From: Podarcis erhardii
Taxonomy: Eukaryota
Assembly: GCA_964252035.1 (NCBI GenBank)
Contig: OZ176212.1
DNA length: 64,000 bases
Direction: 5' to 3' (one strand)
Below, in pieces: positions 6,844-38,835 of this stretch. The position numbers and the translations under genes are program-made. Position 1 is the first letter of the stretch; each line of letters begins with the position of its first letter. The notes under the pieces are model-generated. The model had not been told where the DNA came from. It did no database searches and worked only from the letters and a program-made list of their open reading frames with translations.

Positions 6844-7796
6844 AGTTAGGAAATGTTAGAAATTATTACATGGCAGAATTTAGATTATGTTTCGAGTATG
6901 AAAGGGAAGGTGCCAGACTAAACCAAAAAATCGCCTGAGAAGAAGGGCCATCAAGGTGTAATTACTGGACAATGGCCAGCCATTGACCTTCTGCCTGAGC
7001 TCAGGGTAAATAGCAGAATTGGGAGGGGACAGTTACAGGAGGCATGATGTCACACAGGAAAAATGTGCCCTTTTGGAAAAATAAAAGAGGTCTAGATAAG
7101 TGGGGTGAGTAAATAGAGGTTGGAGAAGAAGAGGGAGGACTCGACAAGTTGTTTTGAAGACCGAACCATCTTGGTGAACTGGCTAAAGGCAGGTTGGGAG
7201 AGAGGCATGGAGATGCCTGGGAATCAATTCTGGGCTACAGTGAAGGAAAGCCTCCTCCTGAGATATAATGTTGTAAATTCTCCCCAAGCCCATGTGTAAA
7301 TATTGGTAAAATAACCCATATTTCTTAAAGACCTTTGTCTCTACTATGTCTTGATTTCACACAACCCTGGGTGAGCACATGGAACCCCCTAGAATCTTGC
7401 TACCATTTAGCAGAGATTGGGGGTGGGGTGGCACACAAACTTTAACACAGTGTCACAGGCAGGCTTTATGGGGTTGACACAAGGATCAGATATCTCCCAA
7501 TGAGCCAAACTCAAACAGGCTCATGACTAAGTCTATCAATCAGTAGTCTCTCAATTCTTTTTCTTTAAAAATGCAGTATTTATTTGAAAATTCACATATT
7601 TGCAAGGGGAAGAACTTTGAATAGAAAATACTTCTTATGCAAAGGGAAGAAAATGCACCTTTTAAAAACAGGGAATGCTTTTCTTTCCAAAGGAGGCTTG
7701 CAAAGCTTCTTGTGCACTATTTCCTAAGCACCAATAGTCAGCTGGATGTCAGTTATGTGGGAAGCACAGTGCAAGAGGTGTAGACACCACAAATCT

Positions 7797-7866
7797 TTTT
7801 TTTTTCTTTCAAATAATATTTATTCAAGCTTTAAAAGGTTACAAAAAGAAACACAATATAACATAT
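7797..7866 (-). mobile_element. L1-type 3' end (poly-A tail and AATAAA) abutting the CR1 5' end
   Basis: Plus strand shows a T-run, then tttatt, then A-rich sequence. This is an L1-like 3'UTR on the minus strand. Confidence 0.5.
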
Positions 7867-10409
7867 CCAAAAGCCAAAGTGAGAGCATTTGGGTCAAAAT
7901 TAAGGGAGAGAAAAATAACAGTGACCTCATTGTGGGCGTTTACTATAGATCCCCAAGCCAAACGGAGGACATAGATGATGCCTTCCTGGAACAGATGGCC
8001 AAGCATGCAAAAGGAAGGGAGACAGTAGTAATGGTCAAACAGATTCCTCACTGTAATGGTCAAATGGTCAAACAGATTCCTCACTGGCCTTGCAGACAAC
8101 TTCATTGTCCAGAAAGTGGGAGAAGCAACAAGAGGAACAGTCATTTTAGATCTGGTCCTAACCAATGTTGGTGACTTGGTTAGTGAGGTAGAAGTGGAAG
8201 GATCATTAGGTGCGAGTGATCATGCTCTTCTGAAGTTTACAGCGGAAAGGAGCAGCCAAGCATACTAGGACTCAATTTCTTGACTTTAAGAAAGCCGACT
8301 TCATAAAACTCAGGGAAGTGCTGGGTGAGATCCCATGGACAGTAATACTAAAAGGAAAGGGAGTTCATGATGGCTGGGAGTTTGTTAAGAGGGAGATAGT
8401 AAAAGCACAACTTCAGGCAATACCAATGAGACGGAAACATGGAAGGTGCCTAAAGAAGCCAGGGTGGTTATCTAAAGAACTTTTAACTGAGTTAAGATTA
8501 AAAAAGGATGTGTACAAAAAATGGAAAAGGGGGGAAACCACCAAAGAGGAATTCAAACAAATAGCCAGCACGTGTAGACACAAAGTCAGAAAAGCTAAAG
8601 CACAGAATGAACTCAGGCTTGCTAGAGAGGTTAAAAGCAACAAAAAAGGCTCTTATGGGTATGTTCGTAGCAAAAGGAAGAGCAAAGAAACCGTGGGGTG
8701 ACTCAGAGGAGAAGATAGTGAAATGCAAACAAGGGACACAGAAAGGGCTGAACTCCTCAATGCCTTCTTTGCCTCAGTCTTCTCCAATAAAGAAAACAAT
8801 GTCCGACCTGAAGAATTTGGAGCAAATGATTCAGCAGAGGAAACACAGCCCAGAATAACTAAGGAGATAGTACAAGAATACTTGGTTAGTTTAGATGTAT
8901 TCAAGTCTCCAGGGCCAGATGAACTGCATCCAAGAGTATTAAAAGAACTGGCAGATGTGATCTCAGAACCACTGGCAGTCATCTTTGAGAATTCCTGGAG
9001 AACAGACGAAGTCCCAGCAGACTGGAGGAGGGCAAATGTTGTCCCTATTTTCAAAAAGGGGAAAAGAGAGGACCCAAATAATTACCGCCCAGTCTGACAT
9101 CAATACCAGGGAAGATTCTGGAGCAGATCATTAAGCAAACAGTCTGTGAGCGCCTAGAAAGGAATACTGTGATCACCAATAGTCAGCATGGATTTCTGAA
9201 AAATAAGTCATGTCAGACTAACCTGATCTCATTTTTACAGAATTACAAGCCTGGTAGATGAAGGGAACGCAGTGGATGTAGTCTACCTTGATTTCAGCAA
9301 GGTATTTGACAAGGTGCCCCATGATATTCTTGTAAAGAAGCTGGTAAAATGCGGACTTGACTATGCTACCACTCAGTGGATTTGTAACTGGCTGACTGAC
9401 CGAACCCAAAGGGTGCTCATCAATGGTTCCTCTTCATCTTGGAGAAGAGTGACTAGTGGGGTGCCACAGGGTTCTGTCTTGGACCCAGTCTTATTCAACA
9501 TCTTTATCAGTGACTTGGATTATGGACTCAAGGGCATCCTGATCAAATTTGCAGATGACACCAAACTGGGAGGGGTGGCTAACACCCCAGAGGACAGGAT
9601 CTCACTCCAAAACGACCTTGACAGATTAGAGAACTCGGCCAAAACAAACAAGATGAATTTTAACAGGGAGAAATGTAAAGTATTGCACTTTGGCAAAAAA
9701 AAATGAGAGGCACAAATACAAGATGGGTGACACCTGGCTTGAGAGCAGTACATGTGATCTAGGAGTCTTGGTTGACCACAAACTTGACATGAGCGAACAG
9801 TGTGACGCGGCAGCTAAAAAAGCCAATGCAATTCTGGGCTGCATTAATAGGAGTATAGCATCTAGATCAAGGGAAGTAATAGTGCCACTGTATTCTGCTC
9901 TGGTCAGACCTCACCTGGAGTACTGTGTCCAGTTCTGGGCACCACAGTTCATGAAGGACACTGACAAACTGGAACGTGTCCAGAGGAGGGCAACCAAAAT
10001 GGTCAAAGGCCTGGAAACGATGCCTTATGAGGAATGGCTAAGGGAGCTGGGCATGTTTAACCAGGAGAAGAGGAGGTTAAGGGGTGATATGATAGTCATG
10101 TTCAACTATATAAAAGGATGTCACATAGAGGAGGGCTGCTCCAGAGAAGCGGACACGGAGCAATGGATCCAAACTACAAGAAAAAAGATTCCACCTCAAC
10201 ATTAGGAAGAACTTCCTGACAGTAAGAGCTGTTCAACAGTGGAATTTGCTGCCAAGGAGTGTGATGGAGTCTTCTTCTTTTGAGGTCTTTAAGCAGAGGC
10301 TTGACAACCATAAGTCAGGAGTGCTCTGATGGTGTTTCCTGCTTGGCAGGGGGTTGGACTCGATGGACCTTGTGGTCTCTTCCAACTCTATGATTCTATG
10401 ATTCTATGA
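7866..10409 (+). mobile_element. CR1 LINE, 5'-truncated, with a disrupted ORF2 (endonuclease C-terminus and RT)
   Basis: Motifs ESIWVKI...[38 protein letters not shown]...KFADDTKL and [13 protein letters not shown]. It ends in the (ATTCTATG)n tail and has several stops and frameshifts. It is absent from copy B. Confidence 0.97.
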
Positions 10410-11678
10410 CTTCACATGCAAGACATGGCTTGAATGAATAGGATGAATGAAATGGCCTTACAAATAGGAAGCCCATGCCTTCCAGATTAGGTCCTCAGGC
10501 TGATAGTTCTCCATTCCTGCTGTAGAGAGTTGCTGGAACTGGAGGGTGGGGCCTGGGTCTGCATCTTTTCTGGAAATGCTAGGTGCCAAAGTGCACCAGG
10601 TGTGGTCATGTTGAGTTAGTAACCACAGAAGGCCATGCCTCTAGTATTGACATTAGTCAGGGCCACCCCAGAGGCAACATTCAGTCTTACAGTCTCAAAG
10701 ATCAATGCTGAATGTTGGAAGAATTTGAACTTTGTGAATTTCAATAAGAGAAGACTCCATTCACCCTTCCCAAATTAATGAATCAGGTGGATTTTGTACT
10801 TCTCCCAACTTTGTGACAGTGTTCTCAGTTCATGTAAAATGTGTAAGTGCATTATCAAATGTTCATTTTAAATTATATTTAGAAAAATACATTTTGTGAG
10901 AAAAATACATTTTTGAATGCTAAACTTAACATTTTGACATGGATTTATTTATTTATATATGTATGCATCATCACACTTTAATGCAGAATTAAATTAATAT
11001 TTGCAATGGTGATACAGACTAGAAATATACTGATCCAACCACCCCTCGTTACACATTCCTACTGTGTCTGAACAAAGCTCTGAAACCAGAGCATAGAGTT
11101 CCAGGTAATTAATATAGTCATAGTTGATTTATTTATAAACCACATATTCTACAAATACATCTGTGCTTGAAGCAGTTCACAAAAATATTTAAATATCGGA
11201 GCAGATTTTGTTGCTGGCATCCTTCTATCTCAGGAGACAATGGAAAAATACATATGCTGTAGAGACTAATATGGGAGAGACATGTTTTGTTGTAGCTGGC
11301 GTAGAGGAAGAAGCACATTTACAAAACATAATAATACCTCATGACACAAAATAATAATGATGATGATAATTAATATTAAATAAAAATAACAGTTCATTTA
11401 ACATACATGAAAATTTAAGAGTGCAAAGTTCAACAAGTCAAGTAGTTTCACATCCAAATGCACCATCAAAGCTGATGGCATCAGTGCTGAGTAACCTCCT
11501 ACCTTTTATTTACACCTGATCCTCAAAGTCCAGAAAGTAACTTCAGACTTAATCTGGAAATGGATCCCTTATAAAGACTCTTATGGCTAGAGTATGGGAA
11601 AAAGCAAGCAGAAACAGCCATTCACTGTTGAAAAACACCGTTTCTTTTCCCTCACATGGTTCTAGATTAAGGTAGGTA

Positions 11679-12024
11679 GAGAGAAAGAGCCAAGCAGTAG
11701 AAGCAAAGACCCAATGAAATCTATGAACTCGATAAAGCTGATGTCAATGCAGGCGAGGTGTAGCAAAGGGGCACTGTCACAGAAGTAGTGATTAACGACA
11801 TTAGTTCCACAGTAAGGCAACCTCACTTTCAGCACTGTTGACAAGAACACAGACAAGAACCCACTGATCCAAGAGCCAATCAGCATACTGACACAAACTT
11901 TCCCAGTCATGAGAGTGGGGTACCTAAGTGGGTAGCAGATGGCCAAGTAGCGGTCAAAGGACATCACAGCAAAAAGGATGAACTCTGTAGAACCCATGAA
12001 GAAGTAGAAGTATGACTGAGCAAA
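11679..12024 (-). pseudogene. OR fragment (TM3-TM5), a truncated duplicate of OR-4
   Basis: Nearly identical to about 19576-19920 (FAQSYFYFFMGSTEF...LLLLGS). The C-terminal part is lost in a deletion of about 0.9 kb relative to copy B, and the N-terminal part is absent. Confidence 0.92.
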
Positions 12025-12420: not shown

Positions 12421-12842
12421 CATTTTATTGATGCTCTCAATTACCTCTAAATTGTCACTTAGACAAATATGCAAAAAAGTTCAACTTATTAAAAGACTTC
12501 TCATTATCATAAAAGTCTTTTCATAAAAGTCTTCTCCTGTATGCATGCATACAATTTTCAGAAGCCAATGGTGTCTAAAGTAACATTTTAGCCATAATAA
12601 TTGAACCAGATAATTAATATTAGTGTTCATTGAACCATCCTCTACCTCAGAGCCCAGGAATTTAGAAATCCACTAGCCTTGGTTAATTTAGCATATCCTT
12701 CATTGTTTCTACATTATTGCAGGCCCTGGACATTCTAAAGCACGGGATGCTTTATAATGAAATTCTTGTTTGGACTATAAGAAATTTAATGCATATTTTA
12801 AAATACAGTACCATTGATGAACACTGTTCCAATACATTTCTA

Positions 12843-19261: not shown

Positions 19262-20209
19262 TTAGTTATATTTTATTCTGGAGGTTAGCTTCTTTAGGAC
19301 ATCTTTTAACACCTCTTTCATTTGTTCATTCCTTAGACTAAAGATGAAAGGGTTCAATAAAGGTGTCAAGATGCCAGAGAAAATGGCTAATGCTTTGTTC
19401 ATGCTCATGGTGTCACTCTGGGATGGCCTGACATAAACAAAGATGGAGATTCCATAGCCCATGGAGACAACAGTGAAGTGGGATGCACAGGTGGCAAAGG
19501 CCTTCTCCCTTCCCTTTGCAGAAGGAATTTTGAGGATGGTACTGATTATGTAGACGTAAGAGACAGCAGTGAATGAGAGAGAGCCAAGCAGTAGAAGCAA
19601 AGACCCAATGAAATCTATGAACTCGATAAAGCTGATGTCAATGCAGGCGAGGTGTAGCAAAGGGGCACTGTCACAGAAGTAGTGATTAATGACATTAGGT
19701 CCACAGTAAGGCAACCTCACTTTCAGCACTGTTGACAAGAACACAGACAAGAACCCACCGATCCAAGAGCCAATCAGCATATTGACACAAACTTTCCCAG
19801 TCATGAGAGTGGGGTACCTAAGTGGGTAGCAGATGGCCATGTAGCGGTCAAAGGACATTGCAGCAAAAAGGATGAACTCTGTAGAACCCATGAAGAAGTA
19901 GAAGTATGACTGAGCAAAGCAACCACCAAACGAAATAGTTTTTCTTTCAGCCAGGAGATTGGCTAACATTTTAGGCACGACGCAAGTTGTCATGAGTATC
20001 TCAATTAAGGACAAGTTGCTGAGGAAGAAATACATAGGGGAGTGAAGGCGATGATCAGTGCAGATGAGTACAATGATGAGTGCATTCCCCAGCACTGTCA
20101 CCAGGTAAATGAGAAGGAAAACTATGAAGAGGATGATCTCCACATTTGGTTCATACATAAATCCAAGCAGAAGAAATTCACTGACATTTGTCACATTCTC
20201 TATTTCCAT
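19262..20209 (-). CDS. Olfactory receptor OR-4 (OR6-like), 315 aa
   Basis: Motifs LHSPMYFFL, MSFDRYMAIC, KAFATCASH, PLLNPFIFSLRN. A splice acceptor (ccttccttcattcag) lies just upstream of the ATG. Confidence 0.96.
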   Translation of the reverse strand: MEIENVTNVSEFLLLGFMYEPNVEIILFIVFLLIYLVTVLGNALIIVLICTDHRLHSPMYFFLSNLSLIEILMTTCVVPKMLANLLAERKTISFGGCFAQSYFYFFMGSTEFILFAAMSFDRYMAICYPLRYPTLMTGKVCVNMLIGSWIGGFLSVFLSTVLKVRLPYCGPNVINHYFCDSAPLLHLACIDISFIEFIDFIGSLLLLLGSLSFTAVSYVYIISTILKIPSAKGREKAFATCASHFTVVSMGYGISIFVYVRPSQSDTMSMNKALAIFSGILTPLLNPFIFSLRNEQMKEVLKDVLKKLTSRIKYN

Positions 20210-20497
20210 GTTATGGCATCCTGAATGAAGGAAGGAGGGGAAGGGATGATAATCAATACTAGCATTGTAAACTCAATTGCTAAGAATAAATAGAAGACCC
20301 ATATTCCACACAGAGTTATATTACATAAACAAGTGGCATAATGAAAAGCAAATGATAGTTGTATTGTATGTATTACTTGATCTTGCTTTGTAAGGATGGG
20401 ATCATGTTTTCTGTTTCTGCAAAGCATGTAAATGTAAAGACTGAAGTGATGAAACATATTTTGCCCTCTTTATTACCCGATGATAAGGTAACAAAAG

Positions 20498-20498
<1 letters not shown>

Positions 20499-20539
<41 letters not shown>
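20499..20539. repeat. (GT)n microsatellite
   Basis: Direct reading of the sequence. Confidence 0.95.
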
Positions 20540-20540
<1 letters not shown>

Positions 20541-21695
20541 TGTATCATATATGTAGAAGATATTAACAAGCTAGAATATAAATACTATTAAAGGATTGAA
20601 ATATGTCTAAAATACTGGGTTGCAAGTGAATGAAAATTTACTTATGAGTAAGCGTCACAATAGGTTGTACTACAAGTAATCATAGCTAAAGTTGTTATGC
20701 ATATGACATTAAGTTTTCTATTCCAGACTATAGTGTAATAGCTTTTATTGCACAATATTTTAGTAATAAGTAAATTATCAGAGTAAAAAAAGAGATAGAA
20801 AAGTATCAGTTTGGCAACAGGTAGGTTTCCTTGAAAATCAATTTAGTTTATATCCAATTTATTTATTTCATAAAATTTATACATCACTTGATTGTAAAAA
20901 CAAACAAACCTCAAGGTGATTTACAAAATTTATTGCTATCATACAAAAATTCTTGTTTCAAAATGTTGAGCTCCTCAAGTTTCATTTTACTCCCATCTAC
21001 AAAATCATCTTAACTGCATTATCATCTGCATTTTCTAGAAAACAATATCCCAGTTTAGAATGTCTGTAAGCATTCAGCTGATAAATGGTTGGTACACGTG
21101 TATATTGTGAGAGTGAGCAAAGTGAGGTATCACAATTATCTTACCTTGCAAACACTCAAGTGTTCTTCTATATGCATAGGAAAGATCACCAGTAAGATTT
21201 CTAGGTGTATGTCGACGCCAGATAATGTGTCCAGAATAATGTCTCTCACCTGCAGAGTTTTTATTACTGCAAACTGCATGTGGTTCCTGAATGTAACTAC
21301 ACTTCCAAATTTATCAAATATAAGGTTGACACCAAAGTAATAACAAATTTTCCCACTGCAGATTTTAAAGAATGAAAGCAAATTCAAATTGTTAATAAAA
21401 ACACCCCAAAACAATTGACCCCTACACAAAAGAGAGAGAATAGCACAGCCCTTCTGAAGATGAAATAGTTTCCTGCCCCAGTCTATTATAAGTACTGTTG
21501 GATTCTGTTATTTCAAACTTTATGCTGTTTCACCTTTTCCTTAGGGAATGTTGCTTGCTACCCCTGACAACATCCCCAGGGAAAAGGGGAATGGAAGAAT
21601 ATTTGTGTATATATGCACACAGGACACATATAAATTTGAGAAGATGATGCCGACAACATTTCATCACATGACTAAAAATAAACCTTTTGGTTTTC

Positions 21696-22275
21696 TTTAA
21701 AGAAGTGAACAAACATTGCAGAATCCCTTTAACCAGAGTGAGGGACTTCACAGCTGACCATGCATATTTGGCTGTGAGCTGGGAGGAAATAGGCCTGGAG
21801 AACGGTTCATGAAGTATGGCTATGAGGTGAAGAACTTCATCAGCCTGGACAAGAAGACCCTGACCTGACAGTAGCCGAGGTGCCCAAGGGGGAATGGGAG
21901 TGTGAATACAATGCCACGCTGACCTGGAAAGGCTACTTAAAGGAGGAATGCATGGAGTCATTTAAGAAACTCATGGACTATGGCAAGACAGCCAGAGATG
22001 AAGGTGACCAGGAAGGCTAACTATGAAGGTTTGAAGACCTTCCTTTGCCAAGCCCACAGCTTCTACACCAAGGGGATTGATGCCAACTGGGTGGAGGATG
22101 GGGAGATCTGACAGGAGGGCACCTTCTGTGGAGTGGTCACACACAACTCAGAAAGGACCTACTATGCTTTGCTTGGCATCAAGACAGACCCCAAGGAGAG
22201 GGACCACTACTTGTGCCATGTGGAGCATGACAGCCTAAATGAGCCTCAGGACATGGTTCAGGATCTCCCACCCAG
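21696..22275 (+). pseudogene. Intron-less MHC class I heavy-chain remnant (end of alpha1, alpha2, alpha3)
   Basis: My translation across frameshifts: LQNPFNQSEGLHS*PCIFGCEL...KYGYEVKNFISLDKKTLT(W)...EWE...GYLKEECMESFKKLMDYGK / PEMKVTRK...FLCQAHSFYTKGIDANWVEDGE...NSERTYY...DPKERDHYLCHVEHDSL. Both Cys pairs and the NQS glycan site are kept. It has stops and frameshifts and no introns. Confidence 0.88.
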
Positions 22276-22656
22276 CAGTGGAGCAAGCCGATTGGGTGCC
22301 CGAGGTGGCGTGCTTGCCCTGAGCCCAGGGGTGGGGCTAGCTGCCCATGGGAGCAGGACCAGCTGCCCGCGGGGGGGGGGGGGAGGCAAGCCAGGGCAGA
22401 ATGCTCCATAGGGCCTCCAAGGAATTGGCCTGCCTCCTCCCACTCAGCCGCCCTACAGCTGAGGGGAAGGTAGGAGGCAGGCCCTTTAGGGCAGCGTGGA
22501 GCCTGCAGGCGCCCAAGCCACCACGTCACTCCTAGGAGAGACGTGTGGCTTGGGCGTGCTGCAGGCCCCGTGATAAGTGCCGCCCAGCATTTTGTCACCC
22601 CCTCAGTGGTGACACCCAGGGCTGACTGCCCCCACTGCCCCCTTCCTCCACCACTG
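22276..22656. mobile_element. GC-rich MITE (non-autonomous DNA transposon) immediately after the MHC-I alpha3 region
   Basis: Imperfect terminal inverted repeats CAGTGG(---)AGCAAG and CTTCCTCCACCACTG. No clear TSD. Confidence 0.6.
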
Positions 22657-23395
22657 CTCTCACCACCACCCTCACAAAAATGAATCACCTCTTGTGTTAA
22701 TAGAAAATATTACAGTAGGCATGAACGTAAGAATTTCAGCAGAACTTAATTATCAGGAGACTAATTAATACGACCCACATTTTAAATAAGAATCCAGTTG
22801 TGTGTTCCCACAGGGAACTAATGAGTCAGGGAATGTGGGTTAAGCACTTCTTGGAATTTTTGTAAAGTTTGAGGGGGGGGGATACAATTCTTTGCCTTTC
22901 ATTATTTTGAAATTAGGTAGAAAATATATCTTGGGAATAATGAAAGCATTGACACTCCTGGGTAAAATGGCAAAGAAAGAAATACAGTTTTGCAGCTACA
23001 GTAATTAGTTATTAGAAGTTGTTAGAAATGTTTATCTATGAAATTAAACAGTATTACTCTACAATAGAGGGCATTTGGCATTAATACTTACACTTGTAAA
23101 CTTGTACTAATCAACAACATACATTTTTCTGGTTGACATTTCTGATTAGCCAAAGCAGCCATTTAGTATCTTGTTCATGTATCAATCTACATAAATCCAC
23201 TTGGAAGGTACTTTGACACAACGCTTCCTGCATGAACCTATAGTGGAGTGGGTGGGATAATTCTAAAATAATTTTGACATAGAGAAAAGGACAAAATCTA
23301 AATATGATTTTGAACAGCTTAATCTGTTCAATGCTGATTTTATTCTATATAAAATATAGGACAGTAAAGCATTAATATTAATAATAATAATAATA

Positions 23396-23399
<4 letters not shown>

Positions 23400-23444
<45 letters not shown>

Positions 23445-23632
23445 TTCCACCCATCTGGCTGGGTTTTCCCTGTCACTCTGGTTGGCTCCCGACAGAATAT
23501 CAAGCATTAAAAACATCTCTAAATAGGGTTGTCTTCAGATGTCTTCTAAAAGTCAGATAACTGTTTATTTCCTTGACATCTGATGGGAGGGCATTCCACA
23601 GGGTAGGCACCACTATCAAGAAGGCCCTCTGT
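23400..23632 (-). mobile_element. L2-like LINE 3' end with an (AAT)n tail
   Basis: An (ATT)n run is followed by ...tagggttgtcttcagatgtcttctaaaagtcag...gggagggcattccacagggtaggcaccact, resembling squamate L2 3' regions. Confidence 0.65.
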
Positions 23633-24342
23633 ACTCAGTAGCACAGCAATATTGGCTAAACTACTTCATTTACATATAATACACTCAGAGCATTCTGATT
23701 TAGCTCCTTCCTCTTTCTCATCAGGCAGCAAAGAGAAAGAGACAAAGGATAATAGTCCTACATTCCGGAACACAGCAATATAAACATCCTGTCTCTGTCA
23801 CTTCCCACTATGTGGAATGAAAACATACACCGTTATGTGATAAAAAAACAATCCCATGACTGCAACACGGGGCAAGAATCCTTACAGTAACTAGGGACTA
23901 CATGCAAGCAGAAACAGACTTCTGATTGTGTGTTGGGACAGGGAATTTTGCAAACCAATGGGTGTTGCATGCTAGAGCTGTGCACAAAAATTTCAATCCA
24001 CCCTGAAGCTCTTGTCTATACCCTTCCTGCTCCAAGATTGGACTGATTTGCCTTGGTCTAGTCTGGAGTCCACCCACCTCACCCCAAATCCATCCCCAAA
24101 GCCATTTGGGTTACGTTAAAGGATTGTTTTGTTTTGTTTTTACAACCATATAAAAAAGCCAGGAGGAAATCTACCAACACTGTGCAGGATCTGATTCTAT
24201 CACTTAGCAGCTGTCCAATTCTAAATGGTGCTGCTCCTTCATGAGGAGCTTCCTTGCATGCAAAAGAATCTGCTTGCAAAGAGCTAAAACTCCTTCATGA
24301 GGTCTGTGTAACTCAGATGAAATGAGCATTCACATTTTATAA

Positions 24343-25153
24343 TGTGGGAGCCCTTTACAGGATCGTGTGTGGTGCTACAGTTCCCAGGTAACTATCTAGT
24401 AGAGAGGGGGCTTGCCTGCCTCTCAGCATTATTATTTGGAGGTTCATGCCCAGCCTCAGTAGTCATGTTTCATTGCTGGGAGGTGGGGGCCAGTCCCATT
24501 TATAATTAGGAGGTGGAGCCGACAGTAGCCAGGCAGTCGGCTCAGGAGATTCACCCTCCCTACCCTCCCTTTTTTTAATGTTTTCTTGTTTGCAAGTTAA
24601 CTTTTTCTTCCTGTTTAGTGAGCGCTGCTACGGTCTTTGACTGGTTGCTGTTGAAGGACTGGGAAGAAATTTTCCTGCATTGGCAGGTTTTGTCTTTGCC
24701 GTAGCAATTCATCACAACTTTGGCGGTTATGGCCTTGGGTAGAATCCCTTAGTCTTTTCTTCCCTATAATGGCGGGGGGGGGGATGAAGTGGTGACTCAC
24801 CCCCCTGTGGCGGTGATTCCAGGGTCCCCCTCTTAAAGGGGTTATATATATGGGTTTCATTGGCCATACACTGAAAGGTTGTCAGTGAACCACCCTGCGT
24901 GCGGGGATATGGGCTTGGCTGCCTGCTACACTTACATCTCACAGAGCACCCCCATATCCCATTTACCCTGATGAGCCCCAGTTCCCCCTGGCTGGGGGGC
25001 TGGGAGGGATACACGCCCAAGGCCTAAGCCAAGGTCTTCCTACATTCAGAAGTTTAATAAAGCTGTGGCCTGATTTTTAATTCCATAATGTCAGAGTCTT
25101 TGTTCCTTTCTTATGATCCCTGGGGGCTGGGGGCTGCAGCACCTGGTCACACA
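24343..25153 (+). mobile_element. Solo LTR (probably Gypsy-type)
   Basis: TG...CA ends, AATAAA at about 25056, and 4-bp flanks ATAA/ATGA matching at 3 of 4 positions. It shares internal blocks with the element at 60705. Confidence 0.6.
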
Positions 25154-26806
25154 ATGATACCTTCTGAATGCTGATGATGCCTTAGACTCAGGAGACCCCA
25201 TTCTTGCCACTAGCTCCCTATCTTGGTCACCCTTGGTCAGCATTGATGGCCTTGCTATGCTTCCCACTTCATAACTCTAGTCTAGAATATTTTGAAGTAT
25301 GCATCGTACTCCCCAGCATTGCCCTAAGAGTAATATCTATACTAACTGGGCCTCCAAGGACTTTTTTTATTAATTAGTTTGTTTATTTATTCAGGTTGTG
25401 TGGGGGTTGAATAGACATCTTTTGATGCATATAGAGAGACAGAAAGAAGGGCTGAGGATGCCATTTTCCTTGCGATTGCAGAACTAATTTTAAAGTCAAA
25501 TAGGTTAGTTTTTCAAAACACTTGGTGCTGGAACCAGTCTTTTAGCAAGGTGCTCTAGTGCTTTATGGAGGTCAGAACAGACTTTACTCTTAGCAGGATT
25601 CATCGCTAGACACATGGGGTTTTAGATTGCTAGTGGATAAAAAATACGGTATGTTAAATCTAGATGAACTTTAGTGCTCCTTTCCACACAGAACTCATGG
25701 ATTTATGCCACTTAACTGTCCATGTTTTAACAAGAAATGCAGACATGCTAACTTCTAGACTTATTTTATTGTCCTTTTTATTGTGTGCTTAACTTGTTCA
25801 TATACCTGTTATTACAGAACCTATAGGAAACACTTAACACGTATGATTTTCCTTAGAAGAACTAGTCCACGATGGTCTGGCAGTAGCCATCATACTGCAA
25901 ACAATTTTATTTTTCTTCTTTGATGGACATGTAAGCATGGATAACTCAGTCAACAAGAAAGTGAGTAATTACAAAAATCTATCATCTATCTCTATCTCTC
26001 TATCTCTCTATCTGATGTTCATACCAGCATATGAGGTGATATAGCTCAATGGCAGACCATATGATTTCCATATAAATAGTCTAAGATTCAATCTCTGGCA
26101 GACTGCCATCATGTAGACAAGTAGTTGGAGGTAAAGCCCATCAAAATTACTGGGCTTCCCCGTCTCCCAACTAAATAAATGTAAGAGGCACTAGCATCCT
26201 GAGGTGTGTGGTTGATGTCTTAACATAGATATCAGAAGGAAAGGTTTGGTTGATCGAAATGGTAGCTGCCCATCCTTCTTCATGTAACTCACATGTTACT
26301 ACTGCCTGTTTATTTGAGGCTAGGGAGATATCTGGATTGGAAGAACACACTGCAAAAATAAAGAGGTTTCCAAAGGAAGTTAATGCTTTTCTCAAATTTT
26401 GGGAACCTCTGCAGTGTGTATCCTAGTGTGTCCTGTGTCCTAGTGTGTAATTTTATACCCACTTAGAAGCAAGCAAACCCTGATATTAAAAACTTATAGC
26501 ACAAATATATGAAATTTGCCCTCTCTAGCCTTATATGTACAAATGCTGCTAGTGCATATACACATACATTAGGACATTATGTTACACTGTTTCATATGCA
26601 GCAGGTAAGTTAGTGTTGGAGCAACATTATAAACTGGAACTCTGTGTGCATTAAGCACTTGTTGTCCAGACACTTTCATTATCTATATCACAATAAATAG
26701 AGAAATAATAGTACACAGGATCAAATGCACAAACAGAGAAATTTGATGACTAGTTTACAAATTAAGCTTGATTTAATGTGCACGTGTACATTTATACAAG
26801 TAATGG

Positions 26807-26868
26807 CAGGAGGTTGGACTCGATGGCCCTTGTGGTCTCTTCCAACTCTATGATTCTATGATTCTATG
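26807..26868 (+). mobile_element. CR1 3' tip
   Basis: ggttggactcgatggcccttgtggtctcttccaactc followed by the (ATTCTATG)n tail, as at 10350-10409. Confidence 0.85.
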
Positions 26869-27149
26869 AATTAGGGCCAGCTAGCACACATATAAACTCC
26901 TCACCCAATATTCACATCTCTAATGAGTGACTTTCATGTTTAAACATATTGCCACAGGGGGGGGAAATTGTATGCCCTAGCATCACCCCAGTGCAATGTT
27001 TTCCAAATGACATTTCCAGCTACTCATCATCAATTAAGTAGCAATTAAATGTAGATCAATGAAGCAATGTGTATGTTTGTATGAACAAGGTATTTTTGAC
27101 TATTAACTGAATGTATACACTAACTATAATATCTGGAAGTTTGGTGATT

Positions 27150-27322
27150 AGTGTTGGACTTGGACAAGGGAGATCTGCATTTAAATTCCTGTTCAGCCAC
27201 AAAGCTTATTGGGTGGCATTGAGGCAAGTAACCATTTTACAGCCTAATCTATGTCTGAAGGTGACTGTGAAGATAAAGGGGGCGGGGATGTTCATCACCT
27301 TGAGCTCTTTGGAGAAAAGTCA
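27150..27322 (+). mobile_element. Old MIR/CORE-like SINE remnant
   Basis: Degenerate ...ggagatctgcatttaaattcc..agccac...gaggcaagt...cagcctaa...ctgtgaagataaa. Confidence 0.4.
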
Positions 27323-27771
27323 AAATATACATTTAATAATAGAATCATTCTGTGACATTATGTCTCTTATGAGTGACTGAAGACATTCCTAAATGTTATA
27401 AGCAACTGAGGAATATACTTCTGGGAACCAAGCATAAGATAAGGTAGGGATGGGGAACAACTGACCCCCCCATTGTTGTTGGACTACAGTTCCCATTATC
27501 CCTGACTATTGGTTATGATGGGCATGGCTACTGGATGTTGGAGTGAAACTTCTGGAAAGCCAGAGGTTCTCCATCCTTAAGCTATTTATTTTCTCTCATA
27601 CTGCAAAGCAGGAAAAAGCCAGTAAAAGTCAGGTCCAGGAAGTCAGTCAGCTGGCTATCCTGCAAAATGGTGGCAGTCTGGAGACATCTGAGATGTAGCA
27701 CTGTGGTTCCGATACCATTTGTAACAAGATGCTTTCTCTTTATCTAGGTGGAGAGATAAATATGATGAAAC

Positions 27772-31768: not shown

Positions 31769-32722
31769 ATGACAGAGAATCAAACTGTTATTACAGACTT
31801 CATCTTCCTTAACTTTCCAGAACTGCATCGGCTGGAACATCTCATGGGAGTCATCCTCCTTGCATGCTACCTGCTCACCGTATCTGGAAACCTCATGATC
31901 ATCATGATCATCATTCATGATCATCACCTACACACACCCATGTACTTCTTCTTATGGAATCTTTCCTGCTTAGAGATTTTAATTACAACCACTGTAGTGC
32001 CAAAGGTTCTGGCTAGTCTTCTGCTAGGCTTCACAACAATTTCGTACCCAGCTTGCCTTTCTCAGTGCTATTTCTTCTTCTTCTTAGGAAGCAGTGACTT
32101 TGTCCTATTAGCAGTCATGTCATACGACCGCTATGTGGCCATTTGCAACCCATTGCGCTACACATCAATTATGAGTACTCAGCTCTGCCCATGGCTAGTC
32201 CTCGGATCTTGTACTGTTGCCTTTTTGGCTACTATCTTTCCCACCATCCTGGTTATAAATCTACCTTTCTGTAACAACAATAATATTGATCACTTTTTCT
32301 GTGACAGTGTGGCCTTGATGAAGCTGGCTTGTGCTGACACTAGTTTTGTGGAGCTACTGAGTTTCTTCTCATCCTCAGTCACCGTGGTGGGATCCTTTAT
32401 TTTCACAGTGGTGTCCTACATTTACATAATAAAAACCATTCTCAAGATCCCGTCTGCCTCTGGGCGCCACAAGGCATTCTCCACCTGTTCCTCCCACTTT
32501 ATTATTGTCAGTCTTGGCTATGGCAGCTGCATCTTCATGTATGTACGGCCCTCAGGCAGCAACCCATCAATTAATAAGATGGTATCTTTGATCAATACAG
32601 TGCTGACACCCCTGATGAGTCCATTCATCTTCAGTCTGAGAAATCAGCAGGTGAAAGCTGCCCTCAAGTCACTTTTTATTAAGCATGCAGTCTACTCAAA
32701 GAATAACCCAAAGTTGGGATAA
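31769..32722 (+). CDS. Olfactory receptor OR-6 (OR6-like), 317 aa
   Basis: Motifs LHTPMYFFL, MSYDRYVAIC, KAFSTCSSH. Splice acceptor ttctttctctcag at about 31753. Confidence 0.94.
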   Translation: MTENQTVITDFIFLNFPELHRLEHLMGVILLACYLLTVSGNLMIIMIIIHDHHLHTPMYFFLWNLSCLEILITTTVVPKVLASLLLGFTTISYPACLSQCYFFFFLGSSDFVLLAVMSYDRYVAICNPLRYTSIMSTQLCPWLVLGSCTVAFLATIFPTILVINLPFCNNNNIDHFFCDSVALMKLACADTSFVELLSFFSSSVTVVGSFIFTVVSYIYIIKTILKIPSASGRHKAFSTCSSHFIIVSLGYGSCIFMYVRPSGSNPSINKMVSLINTVLTPLMSPFIFSLRNQQVKAALKSLFIKHAVYSKNNPKLG

Positions 32723-33626
32723 TGGTTTTTAAATAGAAAACATGAAGGTGAAATTAAATGAAGGGGGGAGTTTCCTTTCAATTGTCTGTTGTTATTAGGT
32801 AATCCACAAGATTTCAACTTTTCAGGTATAGTTTATATTAATTAGAGGGTCATGTGTAACTTCTTCACTTAGAGGGGGGAGAACTTCTTGCACTACATAA
32901 TTTAAACTACTGGAAACTTCAGATTAGATTATAGATATTGCATGACTCTCTATTTTCTTTTAATTAAAAATGCATTTATTGTACTGTATTGTTTACCTTT
33001 CTCGTGTTGTAAATCACTTTGATATGTTTTGTGATTTAGCTGTATATAAATGCTTTTATAAATTAAATAAATATTAGAACTCTGTGATCAATAGTTACCA
33101 CTATTTATTGTTTGGTATATCTGCTAGCTGCTATATACCTTTACTGTGATACATTATTCACTCAACTATCAAATATTTTGAAATGCCTATATATGAAATT
33201 CAAAAAATCTGAGGTAGACTTCATTACATAGTTATTTTGGGTAACTTAGTACTAGAACTCAGTTTATTTCAGTTTGTTCTAGCTACTTACATAGAAGAGC
33301 ATCTGGAGAGAAAAGTAAGATATGAATTTTAAATCCACTGGTAGTTTTGTTTATATATGCACAAGCACAAGTTGTTTAATGACTTGATTCCAGGTTCAGG
33401 GAAACTTCTGAACTCTCCTTTTGTGGCACATTAGGCCCAGTGTATGGGAGAAATGGAGCTGATGAAGAATGAAATAGTGGGTAGCATTCTTGAGGGGTTT
33501 CTCAGACAACAGTTAGGCAGTGAACTGGGTCCCAGGAGGTAATTGTGATCTCCCCAGGAGGAAATTGCAGAAATTCCCAGCAAAAACCATGCCAACCACC
33601 ACCCAGTAGTGAATGCATGTCCAAAG

Positions 33627-34152
33627 GCATTACTCCGCGTCTATGTCCATGCACAATGAATGAAGTAGAGGACTTCATACATTTCTTTTTCTACTGCCCT
33701 ATTTATGAGCTAATAAGAACTAAGCTCCTCCTCTTGATCCCATCCACCATCACATCTAAGGAAGACTGTTTGAAATCGCTTCTTGTGGACGCAAATCCCC
33801 AAGTTACACGTGGGGTGGCAATCTTTATAGTGCAGGCCTTGAAACTCAGGGCTACTTTGACGGAGTAGTGTGTCCTAGACCTGGTCCTGTCTTAATTCTT
33901 TTATTTCCTTTTAACCTAATGTCCCGAGCCTATTTTGGGGCCATTATATGCTTTTTATACATTCACATTCTAGATTTCCGGCGCTGGCAACTAAATCTTT
34001 ACATTATTGTCTTAGGGTAATTTAAATGTCATAACCCCAGCAATATCGCTTTGAATTTTGTGTGGTTGTTTGTTTCTAGCATTTTTTGTTTTATCCTGCT
34101 ATGGCTGTATGCTAATGCAATAAAGGTTTGATTGATTGATTGATTGATTGAT
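33627..34152 (+). mobile_element. 5'-truncated non-LTR retrotransposon (RTE-X/Crack-like) with an (ATTG)n tail and 13-bp TSD
   Basis: C-terminal zinc knuckle RLCPCTMNEVEDFIHFFFYCPIY, stop at 33868, AATAAA and (ATTG)n. TGCATGTCCAAAG is duplicated at 33614-33626 and 34153-34165. Confidence 0.8.
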
Positions 34153-34308
34153 TGCATGTCCAAAGTCCGCTTTGGGGGCAGGACAGTCAGTTTATTTCCA
34201 GGGGTAAAATCCTAAAAAAAGTTCAACAACTTTGGTCGGCTCCTTGGTTGGCCCTCACAACCCTTCACTTTATCAAATTTGCCACTCTTTGGGGGGGGAA
34301 AAGGTTGC

Positions 34309-36120
34309 ACTTCCGCTTGGGTGCCTGGTTATAGCGGACGAGAGCTCTTTCGGCTGAAAGAGCCCCAGTGCACTGAAGGCTGGGGAGACCACAAGAGCTT
34401 TGTGGCACCCCGAAAACAACCTCAGATTGAGCATTCTGAGGACCTGGTATTCCTGTGGGTGCCCAGAATGACTCCCCCGCTCCCCGATAGGCTCGTAAAA
34501 AGAGCTCCAAGAGCGAGCGGGGTTGGAGACGGGGGCACTTGGGAATAGACTTGCTTTCTTCACTGCATGAAGTTCTGAGTCCGGCGATCGTGAACGGCCA
34601 ATTTCTCCAAAATTTATTCGGAAAATTGTGAGTAAAAAGGATATAAATTTAGACAATAAATTTTACAGGAAAGGGAGGTCGATCGCTTCCCACTGAACAA
34701 GAGAGAAAACAGCTACTGCAGTCCAAAGCCACGAATTAAAATAGGACTTTTAGAAGACTTTCAAGTTAAACTTCCATAACCCCCCTTTTAGCAGGAGGAA
34801 GGGGGGAGAAAAACTTTTTATCTAAATAATCCCTGCATGAAATAGACTGGTGAAAATTGCCCTTTTCTTTTCAGAAGCGGATCACCCAGTGGGGAAGGCT
34901 AGACTCCATTGTAACATCACAAAGGAACAGGGTACTTTCAACTTTTGCTTTCCTCTTTGGGGAAAACAAAGTAACTGCAGCTGCCTGAACTGGAAAAAAT
35001 ATTACTAAAAGTGTCTCTTGCCCTCCAGAAACAATTTCAAAGTGGAAAAGCACTTTTTTGAGGTCCATTTGAGGAATTAAAGGTGTAAAAGTAAAGTTAA
35101 AGAAGGGAGGCACTGCTGAATTTTTTATAGGGGCTTTATAGGGGCTTGTGGTGGGAACCTGCTTTCTTCTTTGCTGTCATTTAGTCCATAAATTCCCAAC
35201 AGAAGATATTTATTGCCTTGTGCTGTAATTGTGTTGGAAGATTGGGAAAAGTTATGAAAGAAGGGGGTTAAGTTTACTGCATGTACTGTATTAAAAGAAA
35301 ACATCATGAAAATGATGTATAGATGGTACTTAACCCCAGTAAAGTTAGCAAAGATCTACCACATGAATGATAATACTTTTTTCACATGTGGTGGACGTGT
35401 CCCAAGGTGAAAGACTTCTGGGAAAAGATTTATAATGAATTGAAAAAAAATGTTGAAAAATACATTTATTAAGAAACCAGAGGCCTTTCTACTTGGAATA
35501 ATAGGAATGGAATTTCCAAAAAAGATGTCAAATTATTTTTGTATGCCACCACAGTGGCAAGACTGCTGTTAGCCAAAAATTGGAAATCCCAAGAAATCCT
35601 AGTGGTGGAGAATGGCAGATGAAGATGCTGGATTTTTTTGGAGCTAGCCAACCTGACTGGAAGAATCCACGACTAGAAAGAAGAGGAATATCAAGAAGAT
35701 TGGAAGAAATTTAAGGACTATTTAACTAAATATTGTAATATAAATAATTAGAAGTCAATTGAAAGTACCAAAAAGGCCTGGGATTAAAATATAATTCAAT
35801 TGTAAGTAAATTGGATTTAGAATAGTAAGAAAAGAGAAGAAGATAGTTAATTGTTGGAAATATTTTAGTTGAAGAATCATATTGGAGAGCCATTATATGC
35901 AGACACAATGAAATCCAGAAGGGAGGGATTCGAGGAAGTCAATTAACAATGTAAGATAAATTGGGTTTTTCAAGTGATATGTGTTTATTTTATTTTTTTG
36001 CTTTTCTTTTTTAGTATTGTAATGTGTTTTCTTTTGTGTGTTTTCTTTTCTTTTTTCTATGTTATATTTGTTATACCGTAATTGTGAAAAATGTAATAAA
36101 AATTTTTTGGGGGAAAAAGA
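34309..36120 (+). mobile_element. Internally deleted L1: 5'UTR joined to the ORF2 C-terminus and 3'UTR
   Basis: Starts ACTTCCG with a CpG-rich region. From about 35230 it reads a degenerate WEKL...KMMYRWYLTPVKLAKIY...HMWWTCPKVKDFWEKIYNEL...KKPEAFLLG, then a T-rich 3'UTR with AATAAA. Confidence 0.75.
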
Positions 36121-37478
36121 AAGAAACAAGTTTGGACACCACTGTAAATACAGATGGAATGGAGATCGTGATTCTTGAAATGCAGTGGGGTGCCTCCAAA
36201 CAAGCAAGCTACAAAAATAAATGGAAAATAAATATCTGCTCCAAAGCAGGGTGAGGTTGGGGATCCCTGTCTGTACTTCTTAATTACTCTGTATAGTACT
36301 AGAGAGTACTATATGGCATGCTATAGGTGTGTGAAACTGTGTATGTGACCCAAGAATGGAAAGGGTGCACAGCTTTGCTAGTTATATTATGGGCTGATTT
36401 AGACAACGGGTGCCCACAATGACAATGAAATCAAATATCTCTCCATTAGCATGTCCGCTTTCTTCAGTGAGTAATCTAAGTTATCATAGTGCACAATGGC
36501 AGAATATAAATACTTTAAGCAAATGAACAAATGCTTCTGAGCACTTCAGGGACATCTATGGATTGCTGCTGTGAGTCATTAACATTACCAGTAATCGGTT
36601 GGCTTCTCTCTAACTGAAGAGGAAATCACATTTAATTTTGCAAGTGCCCCCCCCCCCAAAAAGCCATTACCACATGGTAGACTTAGATACATGTCCTAAA
36701 GCCCATTCTAATATGGTAAAGCACAAGGCAGATATTCTGATCCCAGGACATTTCTTTCTCAGCTTCCCTTCACAAGACCAATCGTATGTCTTACACTATT
36801 TTTCCCCCTTTCAAAACAAAAAAGTATAGGACAGTACAGCTGAGATTTTGCAGATATGTTTTGCAGCTACATTGCTATACCTGGAAGCACAATTGTTGAG
36901 AGAGTATTGCCACCCCTGCAATTATTGAAATAATTGCTTCTCTCCCCGCCACCTACTTTCTGAGGCCCTGTGGATACACAGATACTACTTGCAAAATATT
37001 TTGCATGTGTTTGATGCAAAACCTGCCAACTATTAACTTGTATAAATAAGGCATTTGAAATACATTGTCAAGACTGCAGGAAAAGACAGTGTTGATACTT
37101 TCTATCTAAGATTTTTGTGATCTAAAGAACCAGTATTGGGTGGAGGTGTGTGTGTGCGTCTCAGTTTGACTATACTGTTGCAGATATTGGTAGACTATTA
37201 CTTGCTTTGACTTTGGTGCTATGCTGCAGTTAAATGATCTATTAACGTCACTCCTGTAGCTAGTTCACTGAAGGAAAAAGTGCTGTGCAGTCCATAGGTC
37301 ATGACATTAGGCTAAATGAGGCACCAGTTTCAACAAATGAGTAAATTCAGCTTGGAAAGAGAAAAGGCTTCTCTCTGGGAGGTCTGGTGTAGCTTAGGTT
37401 GCAATTCTGTGTGCTAGAGACTTCTATCCAGTTTTGGCCATTGTTGGGTGAAGTGCTTTGCTGGTTTACAAAACAGTT

Positions 37479-37687
37479 ATGCTACTCCTTCTATTGCTAC
37501 TCCTAACTCCTCACACAGTTCAGCAAAGTATGATATGTAGACACACTTCAGAAAGAGATCTGGTAATGTCTGAGAAATATGAGCAAGGGGGTCATACTAT
37601 TGGTGGTGTTTTTTCATTCCGTTCAGCTGCATTTGAATTCAACAGCTTCCGGGAACCTGCTGCTGATGCTGGTATTTATCTGACAAG
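37479..37687 (+). CDS. V2R vomeronasal type-2 receptor, exon 1 (signal peptide)
   Basis: MLLLLLLLLTPHTVQQ...IGGVFS... with donor AG/GTAAGC. 209 nt, phase 2. Confidence 0.85.
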
Positions 37688-38543: not shown

Positions 38544-38835
38544 GGTGCTACCTAAGAATATCCAACATTTCCTGGCTTTTTGGTTTGCCATTATTGAAGT
38601 CAACAAGAATCCAAAGCTTTTACCTAATGTCACTCTGGGTTTCCGTCTACTTGACAACTTGTGCGATGGAAGACTCACTTATTTCACAACAATGCAGTTG
38701 CTCACATCAGGAGGTGTTAGGACCAATAATTATAACTGTGATACAAAGAACAGTGTCTTGGCCATTGTTGGGGGACTTGCATCTGAAAACTCCATTGAAA
38801 TATCAAATATTGCGAGCACCTACAAAATGGCTCAG
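38544..38835 (+). CDS. V2R exon 2
   Basis: QHFLAFWFAIIEVNKNPKLLPNVTLGF...YKMAQ. 292 nt with AG/GT ends, and its phase fits exon 1. Confidence 0.95.

What the first reader, a model, noticed from the sequence alone, without database searches (positions are those of the whole stretch)
21696..22275. Intron-less MHC class I remnant inside an OR/V2R cluster
Seen: the alpha1 end (NQS), alpha2 (Cys at 21773 and 21949) and alpha3 (Cys at 22046 and 22214) run contiguously. Neither domain junction (about 21740 and 21988) has an intron. There are stops at 21755 and in alpha3, plus frameshifts. A MITE follows alpha3, and no TM exon or poly-A is visible. Known: class I genes normally have one exon per domain, OR clusters are linked to the extended MHC in several amniotes, and rodent class Ib (M10) genes are co-expressed with V2Rs. 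Inference: either a processed pseudogene or a dead member of an intron-less class I lineage. I recall reports of such a lineage in squamates but cannot verify that here. Intact relatives near V2R clusters would be the exciting case.
Basis: partly seen in the sequence, partly recalled or inferred. Interest (0 to 1): 0.7.

Follow-up and report, generated by a model that had tools for sequence, protein, structure and literature searches.

The report
Old dead MHC class I retrocopy
This is a roughly 1 kb, long-dead, reverse-transcribed copy of an MHC class I messenger RNA that landed between two smell-receptor genes in an ancestor of lacertid lizards; it is an ordinary processed pseudogene, and I found no sign of an intron-less class I gene family.

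Summary
Window 21710-22264 carries the last ~12 codons of class I exon 2, then exon 3 (alpha2) and exon 4 (alpha3), joined exactly at the exon borders with no introns (tblastn E about 1e-43).

The same fragment, with its GC-rich tail, sits at the same site in Podarcis raffonei, P. muralis, Lacerta agilis and Zootoca vivipara. It is absent there in Rhineura, Hemicordylus, Elgaria and Tiliqua. Outgroup homology stops at about 21558-21708 and resumes at about 22661-22682. So about 1 kb was inserted on the lacertid stem.

It lacks a leader and most of alpha1. All five species share a 20-nt loss at the alpha2/alpha3 junction. Substitutions among lacertids fall equally on the three codon positions. 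Working class I genes in P. raffonei, Rhineura and Varanus have multi-kb introns. In P. raffonei the class I gene fetched lies on another chromosome.

The "MITE" is not supported. It has no terminal inverted repeats and no other copy was found. It arrived with the MHC part and may be the decayed 3' end of the mRNA.

Verdict: an ordinary, ancient, 5'-truncated processed pseudogene. A genome-wide search for intact relatives and an RNA-seq check could not be run.

The parts
21699..21709 (+). Possible 5' copy of a target-site duplication (AAAGAAGTGAA), at the point where homology to the Rhineura empty site ends.
   Evidence: Read directly from the sequence. Rhineura has a single AAAAAAATGAG at the matching place. 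It is degenerate, so this is inference only.
21710..21743 (+). Tail of class I exon 2 (alpha1): ..QTLQNPFNQSE+G. This is the 5' truncation point of the retrocopy.
   Evidence: It aligns to the last ~34 nt of exon 2 of the P. raffonei and Rhineura genes. Upstream sequence does not align. Homology to non-MHC Rhineura sequence runs up to about 21677-21708.
21744..21991 (+). Class I exon 3 (alpha2), joined directly to exon 2. It has a TGA at 21755. Two lesions are window-specific: a 1-bp loss after 21866, which creates TGA 21866-21868, and a 12-bp loss after 21883. A 15-nt loss near the exon's 3' end is shared by all lacertids. Cys codons are at 21773 and 21949.
   Evidence: It is 64% nt identical to P. 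raffonei exon 3.
21992..22264 (+). Class I exon 4 (alpha3, Ig C1-set), joined directly to exon 3. Five nt are missing at its start, a frameshift shared by all five lacertids. TGA at 22109 (TGT in Zootoca). Cys codons are at 22046 and 22214.
   Evidence: Identity to P. raffonei exon 4 is 78% nt and 80%.
22265..22675 (+). It begins within about 10 nt of the expected exon 4/5 junction and ends where outgroup homology resumes. It is probably the decayed 3' part of the same transcript (TM, cytoplasmic exons, 3'UTR). Its identity is not proven.
   Evidence: It is present in all five lacertids and inside the lacertid-specific insertion. No TIR, no other copies, no Rfam/Pfam/protein relatives. It has no detectable similarity to the 3' exons of three class I genes. 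Its internal hairpin at 22498-22569 is disrupted by deletions in L003 and L004.
22676..22684 (+). Possible 3' copy of the target-site duplication (AAAAATGAA). The A-run could also hide a poly(A) remnant.
   Evidence: Read directly from the sequence. Homology resumes at 22661 in Elgaria and at 22682 in Hemicordylus. Inference only.
19262..20209 (-). Intact OR6M1-like olfactory receptor gene, used as the synteny anchor. It is not part of the retrocopy.
   Evidence: It has single-copy-looking relatives of 83-88% identity across squamates. Orthologous loci were fetched.

Best explanation
Window ~21710-22675 is an ancient, 5'-truncated processed pseudogene of an MHC class I gene. A spliced class I mRNA was reverse-transcribed and inserted, most likely by LINE-type target-primed reverse transcription at an A-rich site. 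It landed 1.5 kb upstream of an OR6M1-like gene. This happened on the lacertid stem, after the split from amphisbaenians and before the common ancestor of Podarcis, Lacerta and Zootoca. The copy began inside exon 2, so it never had a start codon, a leader or most of alpha1. It was dead on arrival and has drifted neutrally since. The GC-rich tail came in with it and is most likely the now unrecognisable 3' part of the same transcript. Shown: intron-less exon junctions, shared presence and absence across species, shared lesions, an even spread of changes over codon positions, and spliced genes in three squamates. Inferred: the LINE mechanism, the target-site duplication, and the nature of the tail.
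For: 1. Exon 2/3 and 3/4 junctions are exact, with no intron. The P. raffonei gene L010 has introns of about 6-12 kb. Rhineura L011 has introns of about 3.5-7 kb and Varanus L001 of about 0.7-1.3 kb.
2. The fragment plus tail is at the orthologous site in four other lacertid assemblies, so it is not an assembly or cDNA artefact.
3. It is absent from the orthologous site in Rhineura, Hemicordylus, Elgaria and Tiliqua. tblastn at E<=1 finds no class I there. Flank homology ends at 21558-21677 and resumes at 22661-22682.
4. Lesions shared by all five species are the 5' truncation, the 20-nt junction loss that shifts the frame, and loss of the Trp codon at 22109.
5. Variable sites by codon position are 12.7%, 11.6% and 14.3% (chi-square p=0.74). 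The rate is similar to the flanks: 12.8% against 9.6-17.2%.
6. In P. raffonei the OR locus is on CM049762.1 (56 Mb). The class I gene fetched is on CM049751.1 (127 Mb). The other listed P. raffonei class I proteins come from a contig of that same 127-Mb length.
7. In the exon 4 DNA tree the fragment clade is sister to the lacertid gene, excluding Rhineura (support 91/91). In the protein tree it lies inside the lacertid+Rhineura clade (support 94) but outside the crown lacertid clade (100/99). The AU test does not reject fragment+lacertid as one clade (p=0.55).
8. Earlier notes of this scan report L1 elements and clean retrocopies with TSD and poly(A) in this genome (unchecked AI notes).
Against: There is no clear poly(A) tail, and only a short, degenerate candidate target-site duplication. 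The 3' 400 bp cannot be shown to be class I sequence, so a 3'-complete retrocopy is inferred, not demonstrated. The parent gene was not identified: the best protein identity is about 52-53% overall and 78-80% nt in exon 4. The protein-tree position rests on a very long branch. No genome-wide search was possible.
Confidence: 0.85

Rival explanations
1. It is a broken DNA-level copy of a functional intron-less class I gene lineage (like the teleost L lineage), which still has intact members elsewhere in lacertid genomes, possibly near V2R clusters.
For: Intron-less class I genes do exist in teleosts (PMC4364491). An intact processed class I ORF exists in platypus (PMC2375005). The fragment falls outside the crown lacertid class I clade. 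I could not search the whole genome.
Against: The profile-free search of 1.84 billion representatives found no hit above about 60% identity to the alpha3 piece. No fetched protein exceeds about 53% overall. The three class I genes examined all have introns. The insertion is a clean ~1 kb unit, truncated inside exon 2, at an A-rich site. There is no sign of constraint. No literature supports such a lineage in squamates.
Confidence: 0.04
2. The MHC piece was carried in by a mobile element or formed as a chimeric retrocopy. The GC-rich tail would then be the vehicle (a MITE or other transposon) or a second RNA template joined by template switching, not class I sequence.
For: The tail has no detectable similarity to class I 3' exons. 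It has unusual composition and an internal palindrome. It shares its insertion boundaries with the MHC part.
Against: It has no terminal inverted repeats above chance. No other copy was found in 320 kb. Its ORF has no protein relatives, and it has no Rfam or tRNA match. MHC homology stops within about 10 nt of the exon 4/5 junction. That is expected if the tail is simply exons 5+ of a divergent gene.
Confidence: 0.08
3. It is the remnant of a class I gene that once resided in this OR/V2R cluster (extended-MHC linkage) and lost its introns, for example by conversion with a cDNA.
For: In Varanus komodoensis a spliced class I gene lies 19 kb upstream of a V2R. So class I genes can lie next to V2R genes in a squamate.
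Against: Four outgroups have no class I sequence within 10 kb of the orthologous OR. The lacertid-specific segment is only ~1 kb and starts inside exon 2. The Varanus V2R does not look orthologous to the window's V2R (29% identity in exon 3). In P. raffonei, the class I gene fetched lies on another chromosome.
Confidence: 0.02

Closest known systems
Platypus processed class I gene/pseudogene (OranPS1-2-like, BAC3; PMC2375005)
   Same: It is an intron-less class I copy made from mRNA, located outside the MHC on a different chromosome.
   Different: The platypus copy keeps an uninterrupted 359-aa ORF and is full length. This one is 5'-truncated inside exon 2 and has stops and frameshifts. It is at least as old as the common ancestor of the four sampled lacertid genera.
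Teleost L-lineage MHC class I genes (Dijkstra et al. 2007, as cited in Grimholt et al. 2015, PMC4364491)
   Same: There are no introns between the alpha1, alpha2 and alpha3 coding parts. A retrotransposition origin has been proposed.
   Different: L-lineage genes are intact, expressed, multi-copy and regulated. This fragment is a single dead copy with neutral evolution. No squamate counterpart was found.
Ordinary LINE-mediated processed pseudogenes, for example the LSP1 and PPDPF retrocopies noted earlier in this genome (s1-220632, s1-241337)
   Same: It is spliced, dispersed to an unrelated locus and non-functional.
   Different: Those copies are full length, and the LSP1 copy has a clear TSD and poly(A). 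Here the TSD and poly(A) are eroded to a doubtful 9-11 nt A-rich repeat, and the 5' end is truncated.
Rodent M10 class Ib genes that partner V2Rs (from my own knowledge of Loconto et al. 2003 and Ishii et al. 2003; not checked here)
   Same: The only shared point is that class I-like sequence lies near a V2R gene.
   Different: M10 genes are intact, spliced, expressed in vomeronasal neurons and located in the MHC. This fragment is a dead retrocopy 16 kb from the nearest V2R exon, and it has no ORF.

Membership tests
MHC class I heavy chain (sequence origin) | alpha2 domain with the Cys101-Cys164 pair, matching the MHC_I profile | tested here: met
   PF00129 matches both alpha2 pieces (E 0.011 and 0.0036, below the gathering score because the pieces are short). 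Cys codons are at 21773 and 21949. tblastn with full proteins gives E 1e-43.
MHC class I heavy chain (sequence origin) | alpha3 Ig C1-set domain with its Cys pair, closest to class I rather than class II or beta-2-microglobulin | tested here: met
   The best PDB hit is class I chain 7cpo_A (E 2.6e-11). Class II and b2m hits are far weaker. PF07654 matches. Cys codons are at 22046 and 22214.
MHC class I heavy chain (functional gene) | Complete ORF with leader, alpha1, TM and cytoplasmic tail | tested here: not met
   There is no leader and only ~12 codons of alpha1. There are three stops and two frameshifts. No TM is recognisable.
Processed pseudogene (retrocopy) | Exons joined exactly at splice junctions, while the parent family has introns | tested here: met
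   Junctions are at 21743|21744 and 21991|21992. Introns of 0.7-12 kb are present in P. raffonei, Rhineura and Varanus class I genes.
Processed pseudogene (retrocopy) | Insertion at a locus unrelated to the parent, with an empty site in outgroups | tested here: met
   It is absent at the orthologous site in four non-lacertid squamates. In P. raffonei the class I gene fetched is on a different chromosome.
Processed pseudogene (retrocopy) | 3' poly(A) tract and flanking target-site duplication | tested here: inconclusive
   The only candidates are the A-run AAAAA at 22676-22680 and the pair AAAGAAGTGAA (21699-21709) / AAAAATGAA (22676-22684). Rhineura has one AAAAAAATGAG. They are too short and too decayed to test.
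Processed pseudogene (retrocopy) | Neutral evolution and disabling lesions | tested here: met
   Codon positions vary equally (p=0.74), and the rate is like the flanks. A frameshift is shared by all five species.
MITE (for the tail 22276-22670) | Terminal inverted repeats | tested here: not met
   Best end-to-end inverted alignment scores are 13-15, against a shuffled mean of about 12-13 and a shuffled maximum of 19-23, in all five species.
MITE (for the tail 22276-22670) | Many dispersed copies in the genome | tested here: inconclusive
   There are no other copies in the window or in 320 kb of held loci, and no protein relatives of its ORF. That amount of sequence is too small to exclude a moderate-copy family.
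Functional intron-less class I lineage (teleost L-like) | Intact intron-less paralogues under purifying selection | not testable with these tools
   No tool searches this eukaryotic genome as a whole. Indirect evidence is negative.

The most novel reading that the evidence does not exclude
The fragment is a molecular fossil of a stem-lacertid class I gene. It predates the radiation of all class I genes now sampled in Podarcis, Lacerta and Zootoca. Its tail may preserve, in decayed form, a 3' end (TM, cytoplasmic exons, UTR, or an alternative 3' exon) of a lineage that no longer exists. A bolder version is that intact intron-less relatives of this lineage survive elsewhere in lacertid genomes. 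The probability given here is for that bolder version.
Probability: 0.04. Interest if true: 0.6.

Novelty: new member of a known kind. Interest (0 to 1): 0.14.

Why it matters
It matters little. The result removes a tempting but unsupported link between class I and vomeronasal or olfactory receptors at this locus. It gives a dated neutral marker: an insertion shared by at least four lacertid genera and absent in amphisbaenians, cordylids, anguids and skinks. It also provides one old outgroup sequence for studying the birth-and-death turnover of lacertid class I genes. The sampled lacertid genes otherwise form one clade.

Tried and rejected
- **Reads.** No read depth or RNA evidence was obtained, and I did not try another route.
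- **MITE reading.** Rejected for lack of TIRs and of other copies.
- **Tail as class I 3' end.** I searched the tail against the C-terminal parts of 200 class I proteins. I also searched it against the 3' genomic parts of three class I genes, with a minus-strand control. Nothing exceeded noise, so the idea is unproven.
- **Tail as a known RNA or domain.** Rfam, tRNA and Pfam scans of the tail were empty. The word-indexed protein search with its 169-aa ORF gave no hit.
- **Empty site in Rhineura.** A global alignment to place the empty site in Rhineura exactly was not decisive. The boundaries are therefore given as ranges.
- **Alpha1 farther upstream.** The apparent alpha1 similarity at 21632-21700 in one tblastn alignment was rejected. 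That stretch is homologous to non-MHC sequence in Rhineura.
- **Viral MHC homologue.** This reading was considered and dropped. The insertion is only 1 kb, nothing viral-looking lies beside it, and its nearest relatives are lizard class I genes.
- **AU test.** The test on the 115-row tree did not finish. A 40-row tree was used instead.
- **Spliced model.** Functional genes were compared exon by exon. For the protein tree alone, the window's own pieces were joined locally with X at each break.

Full report
**What is there.**
- Translating 21640-22330 in three frames shows a class I heavy-chain sequence spread over two frames:
  - the alpha1 end (..QTLQNPFNQSEG);
  - alpha2 (..FGCELG.. to ..KEECMESFKKLMDYGK);
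  - alpha3 (PEMKVTRK.. to ..YLCHVEHDSLNEPQDM).
- Pfam finds MHC_I in both alpha2 pieces and C1-set in the alpha3 piece. These scores are below the gathering cut-off because each piece is only 36-55 aa.
- The alpha3 piece matches solved class I chain 7cpo_A at E 2.6e-11. The alpha2 piece matches class I and MR1 chains.
- Whole squamate class I proteins hit the 64-kb window only here, at E about 1e-43.
- The window is an OR/V2R cluster with eight intact OR ORFs and V2R exons. It contains no N, and nothing in it was taken for human.

**No introns, at exact splice junctions.**
- I fetched three class I genes that appear functional:
  - Podarcis raffonei (L010): exons 2-5 are separated by introns of about 6-7 kb, and intron 1 is about 12 kb.
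  - Rhineura floridana (L011): introns of about 3.5-7 kb.
  - Varanus komodoensis (L001): introns of about 0.7-1.3 kb.
- I compared them exon by exon and built no joined model.
- The last bases of exon 2 (..CAGAGCGGAG|gt) and the first bases of exon 3 (ag|GGATCCAC) correspond to the window's ..CAGAGTGAGG|GACTTCAC. The length is the same, so the junction is at 21743|21744.
- Exon 3 ends ..ACAG|gt. The window reads ..GGCAAGACAG|CCAGAG.., so the junction is at 21991|21992.
- Relative to the working genes, 15 nt are missing just before that junction and 5 nt just after it.
- Homology to exon 2 begins only at about 21710.

**Shared across lacertids, absent outside them.**
- The OR6M1-like gene at 19262-20209 served as a synteny anchor. 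It has relatives of 83-88% identity across squamates.
- With it I fetched the orthologous 21-kb loci from P. raffonei, P. muralis, Lacerta agilis, Zootoca vivipara, Rhineura, Hemicordylus, Elgaria and Tiliqua.
- All four lacertids carry the fragment and the GC-rich tail at the same place.
- None of the four outgroups has any class I similarity there, even at E<=1.
- Outgroup homology to the window runs up to 21558 (Elgaria, Hemicordylus), 21584 (Tiliqua) or 21677 (Rhineura). It resumes at 22661 (Elgaria) or 22682 (Hemicordylus).
- So about 1 kb, MHC part and tail together, is a lacertid-specific insertion.
- Presence in five independent assemblies rules out an assembly or cDNA artefact.
- The window is not from any of these four assemblies. 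It differs from the two Podarcis by about 4-6% here, while they differ from each other by 1.3-1.6%.

**Dead and drifting.**
- All five copies share three lesions:
  - the 5' truncation;
  - the junction loss, which shifts the alpha3 frame;
  - loss of the Trp codon at 22109 (TGA in four species, TGT in Zootoca).
- Other lesions are lineage-specific:
  - In the window, a 1-bp and a 12-bp deletion.
  - In the two Podarcis, a TAA and a 4-bp deletion.
  - In Zootoca, a 129-bp insert and a ~190-bp duplication.
- The codon at 21755 is TGA in the window, Lacerta and Zootoca, and TGG in the two Podarcis.
- Among the five species, variable sites are 12.7%, 11.6% and 14.3% at codon positions 1, 2 and 3 (p=0.74).
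- The MHC part varies at 12.8% of sites, against 17.2% and 9.6% in the flanks. There is no sign of protein-level constraint.

**Origin.**
- No protein is close. The best overall identity is about 52-53%, to lacertid and Rhineura class I alike, and about 60-65% in alpha3.
- Exon 4 is 78-80% nt identical to P. raffonei exon 4.
- In an exon 4 DNA tree rooted on Varanus, the five fragment copies form a clade sister to the lacertid gene, to the exclusion of Rhineura (91/91). Exon 3 is uninformative.
- In protein trees the fragment sits on a very long branch:
  - It lies inside the lacertid+Rhineura clade (support 94).
  - It lies outside the crown lacertid class I clade (100/99).
  - Holding fragment+lacertids together is not rejected (AU p=0.55).
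- This fits the synteny bracket. The source was a stem-lacertid class I gene, older than the radiation of the lacertid class I genes sampled.
- In P. raffonei the OR locus is on CM049762.1 (56 Mb). The class I gene I fetched is on CM049751.1 (127 Mb). The other listed lacertid class I proteins come from contigs of 120-127 Mb.

**The tail.**
  - It has no terminal inverted repeats beyond shuffles in any species.
  - No other copy was found.
  - It has no Rfam, tRNA or Pfam match.
  - Its long ORF has no protein relative.
  - Its one clear hairpin (22498-22569) is broken by deletions in P. muralis and Lacerta.
- Recognisable exon 4 homology stops within about 10 nt of the expected exon 4/5 junction. 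The tail ends where outgroup homology resumes.
- The simplest reading is that the tail is the rest of the same mRNA (TM, cytoplasmic exons, 3'UTR), now too diverged to recognise.
- I could not show this, so it stays an inference at roughly 55-60%.
- The tail is 67% GC and varies at 34.5% of sites. That fits CpG decay.

**Mechanism.**
- The 5' truncation, the spliced structure and the A-rich target fit LINE-type target-primed reverse transcription.
- At the target, Rhineura reads ..CCTTTAAAAAAATGAG... The lacertids have AAAGAAGTGAA before the insert and AAAAATGAA after it.
- The poly(A) and the target-site duplication are too eroded to count as evidence.
- Earlier notes of this scan report L1 elements and clean retrocopies in this genome. 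The Zootoca copy itself carries a later small insert with AATAAA, an A-rich end and 9-bp direct repeats.

**Literature.**
- Processed class I copies outside the MHC are known, for example in platypus (PMC2375005).
- Class I genes lacking introns between alpha1-3 are known in the teleost L lineage (PMC4364491).
- No paper in the held library combines 'intronless', 'MHC class I' and 'squamate'. The Anolis MHC paper does not mention such genes.

**Limits.**
- No tool here searches this lizard genome as a whole.

**Verdict.** This is an ordinary, ancient, 5'-truncated class I processed pseudogene. Interest is low.

Noticed in passing
window 20351-21677: The non-coding block upstream of the OR6M1-like start codon aligns to Rhineura (62-72% identity over about 1.3 kb). 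Parts of it also align to Elgaria, Hemicordylus and Tiliqua. It may be the OR promoter, a 5'UTR exon or a cluster regulatory element.
   Followed up: partly
L001 9989-39438 (Varanus komodoensis SJPD01000217.1): A spliced, apparently intact class I gene (alpha1 9989-10261, alpha2 11529-11801, alpha3 12516-12800) lies 19 kb upstream of a complete V2R (31829-39438) on the same strand. GenBank model KAF7235111.1 wrongly fuses the two.
   Followed up: partly
L005 about 7700-8160 (Zootoca vivipara orthologue): The Zootoca copy of the fragment carries a 129-bp insert with AATAAA, an A-rich end and 9-bp direct repeats (GACAAGAAG). It also has a ~190-bp tandem duplication spanning the alpha2/alpha3 junction.
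   Followed up: partly
L004 6295-8304, minus strand (Lacerta agilis): A 200-aa gene with no Pfam hit was called over the orthologous fragment and 1.4 kb beyond it. It is probably a spurious model on the pseudogene. I did not retrieve its product.
   Followed up: no
window 20210-27770 against L002/L003: The window's OR protein is identical to one encoded in P. raffonei. The surrounding DNA nevertheless differs from P. raffonei and P. muralis by about 4-6% in substitutions, while those two differ by 1.3-1.6%. The window therefore comes from a different lacertid, close to Podarcis.
   Followed up: partly
window 7746-10205 (+) and 62552-63457 (+): The ORFs at 7746-10205 look like a LINE reverse transcriptase. 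The 301-aa ORF at 62552-63457 resembles a coiled-coil LINE ORF1. I judged both by eye from the translations and did not scan them.
   Followed up: no
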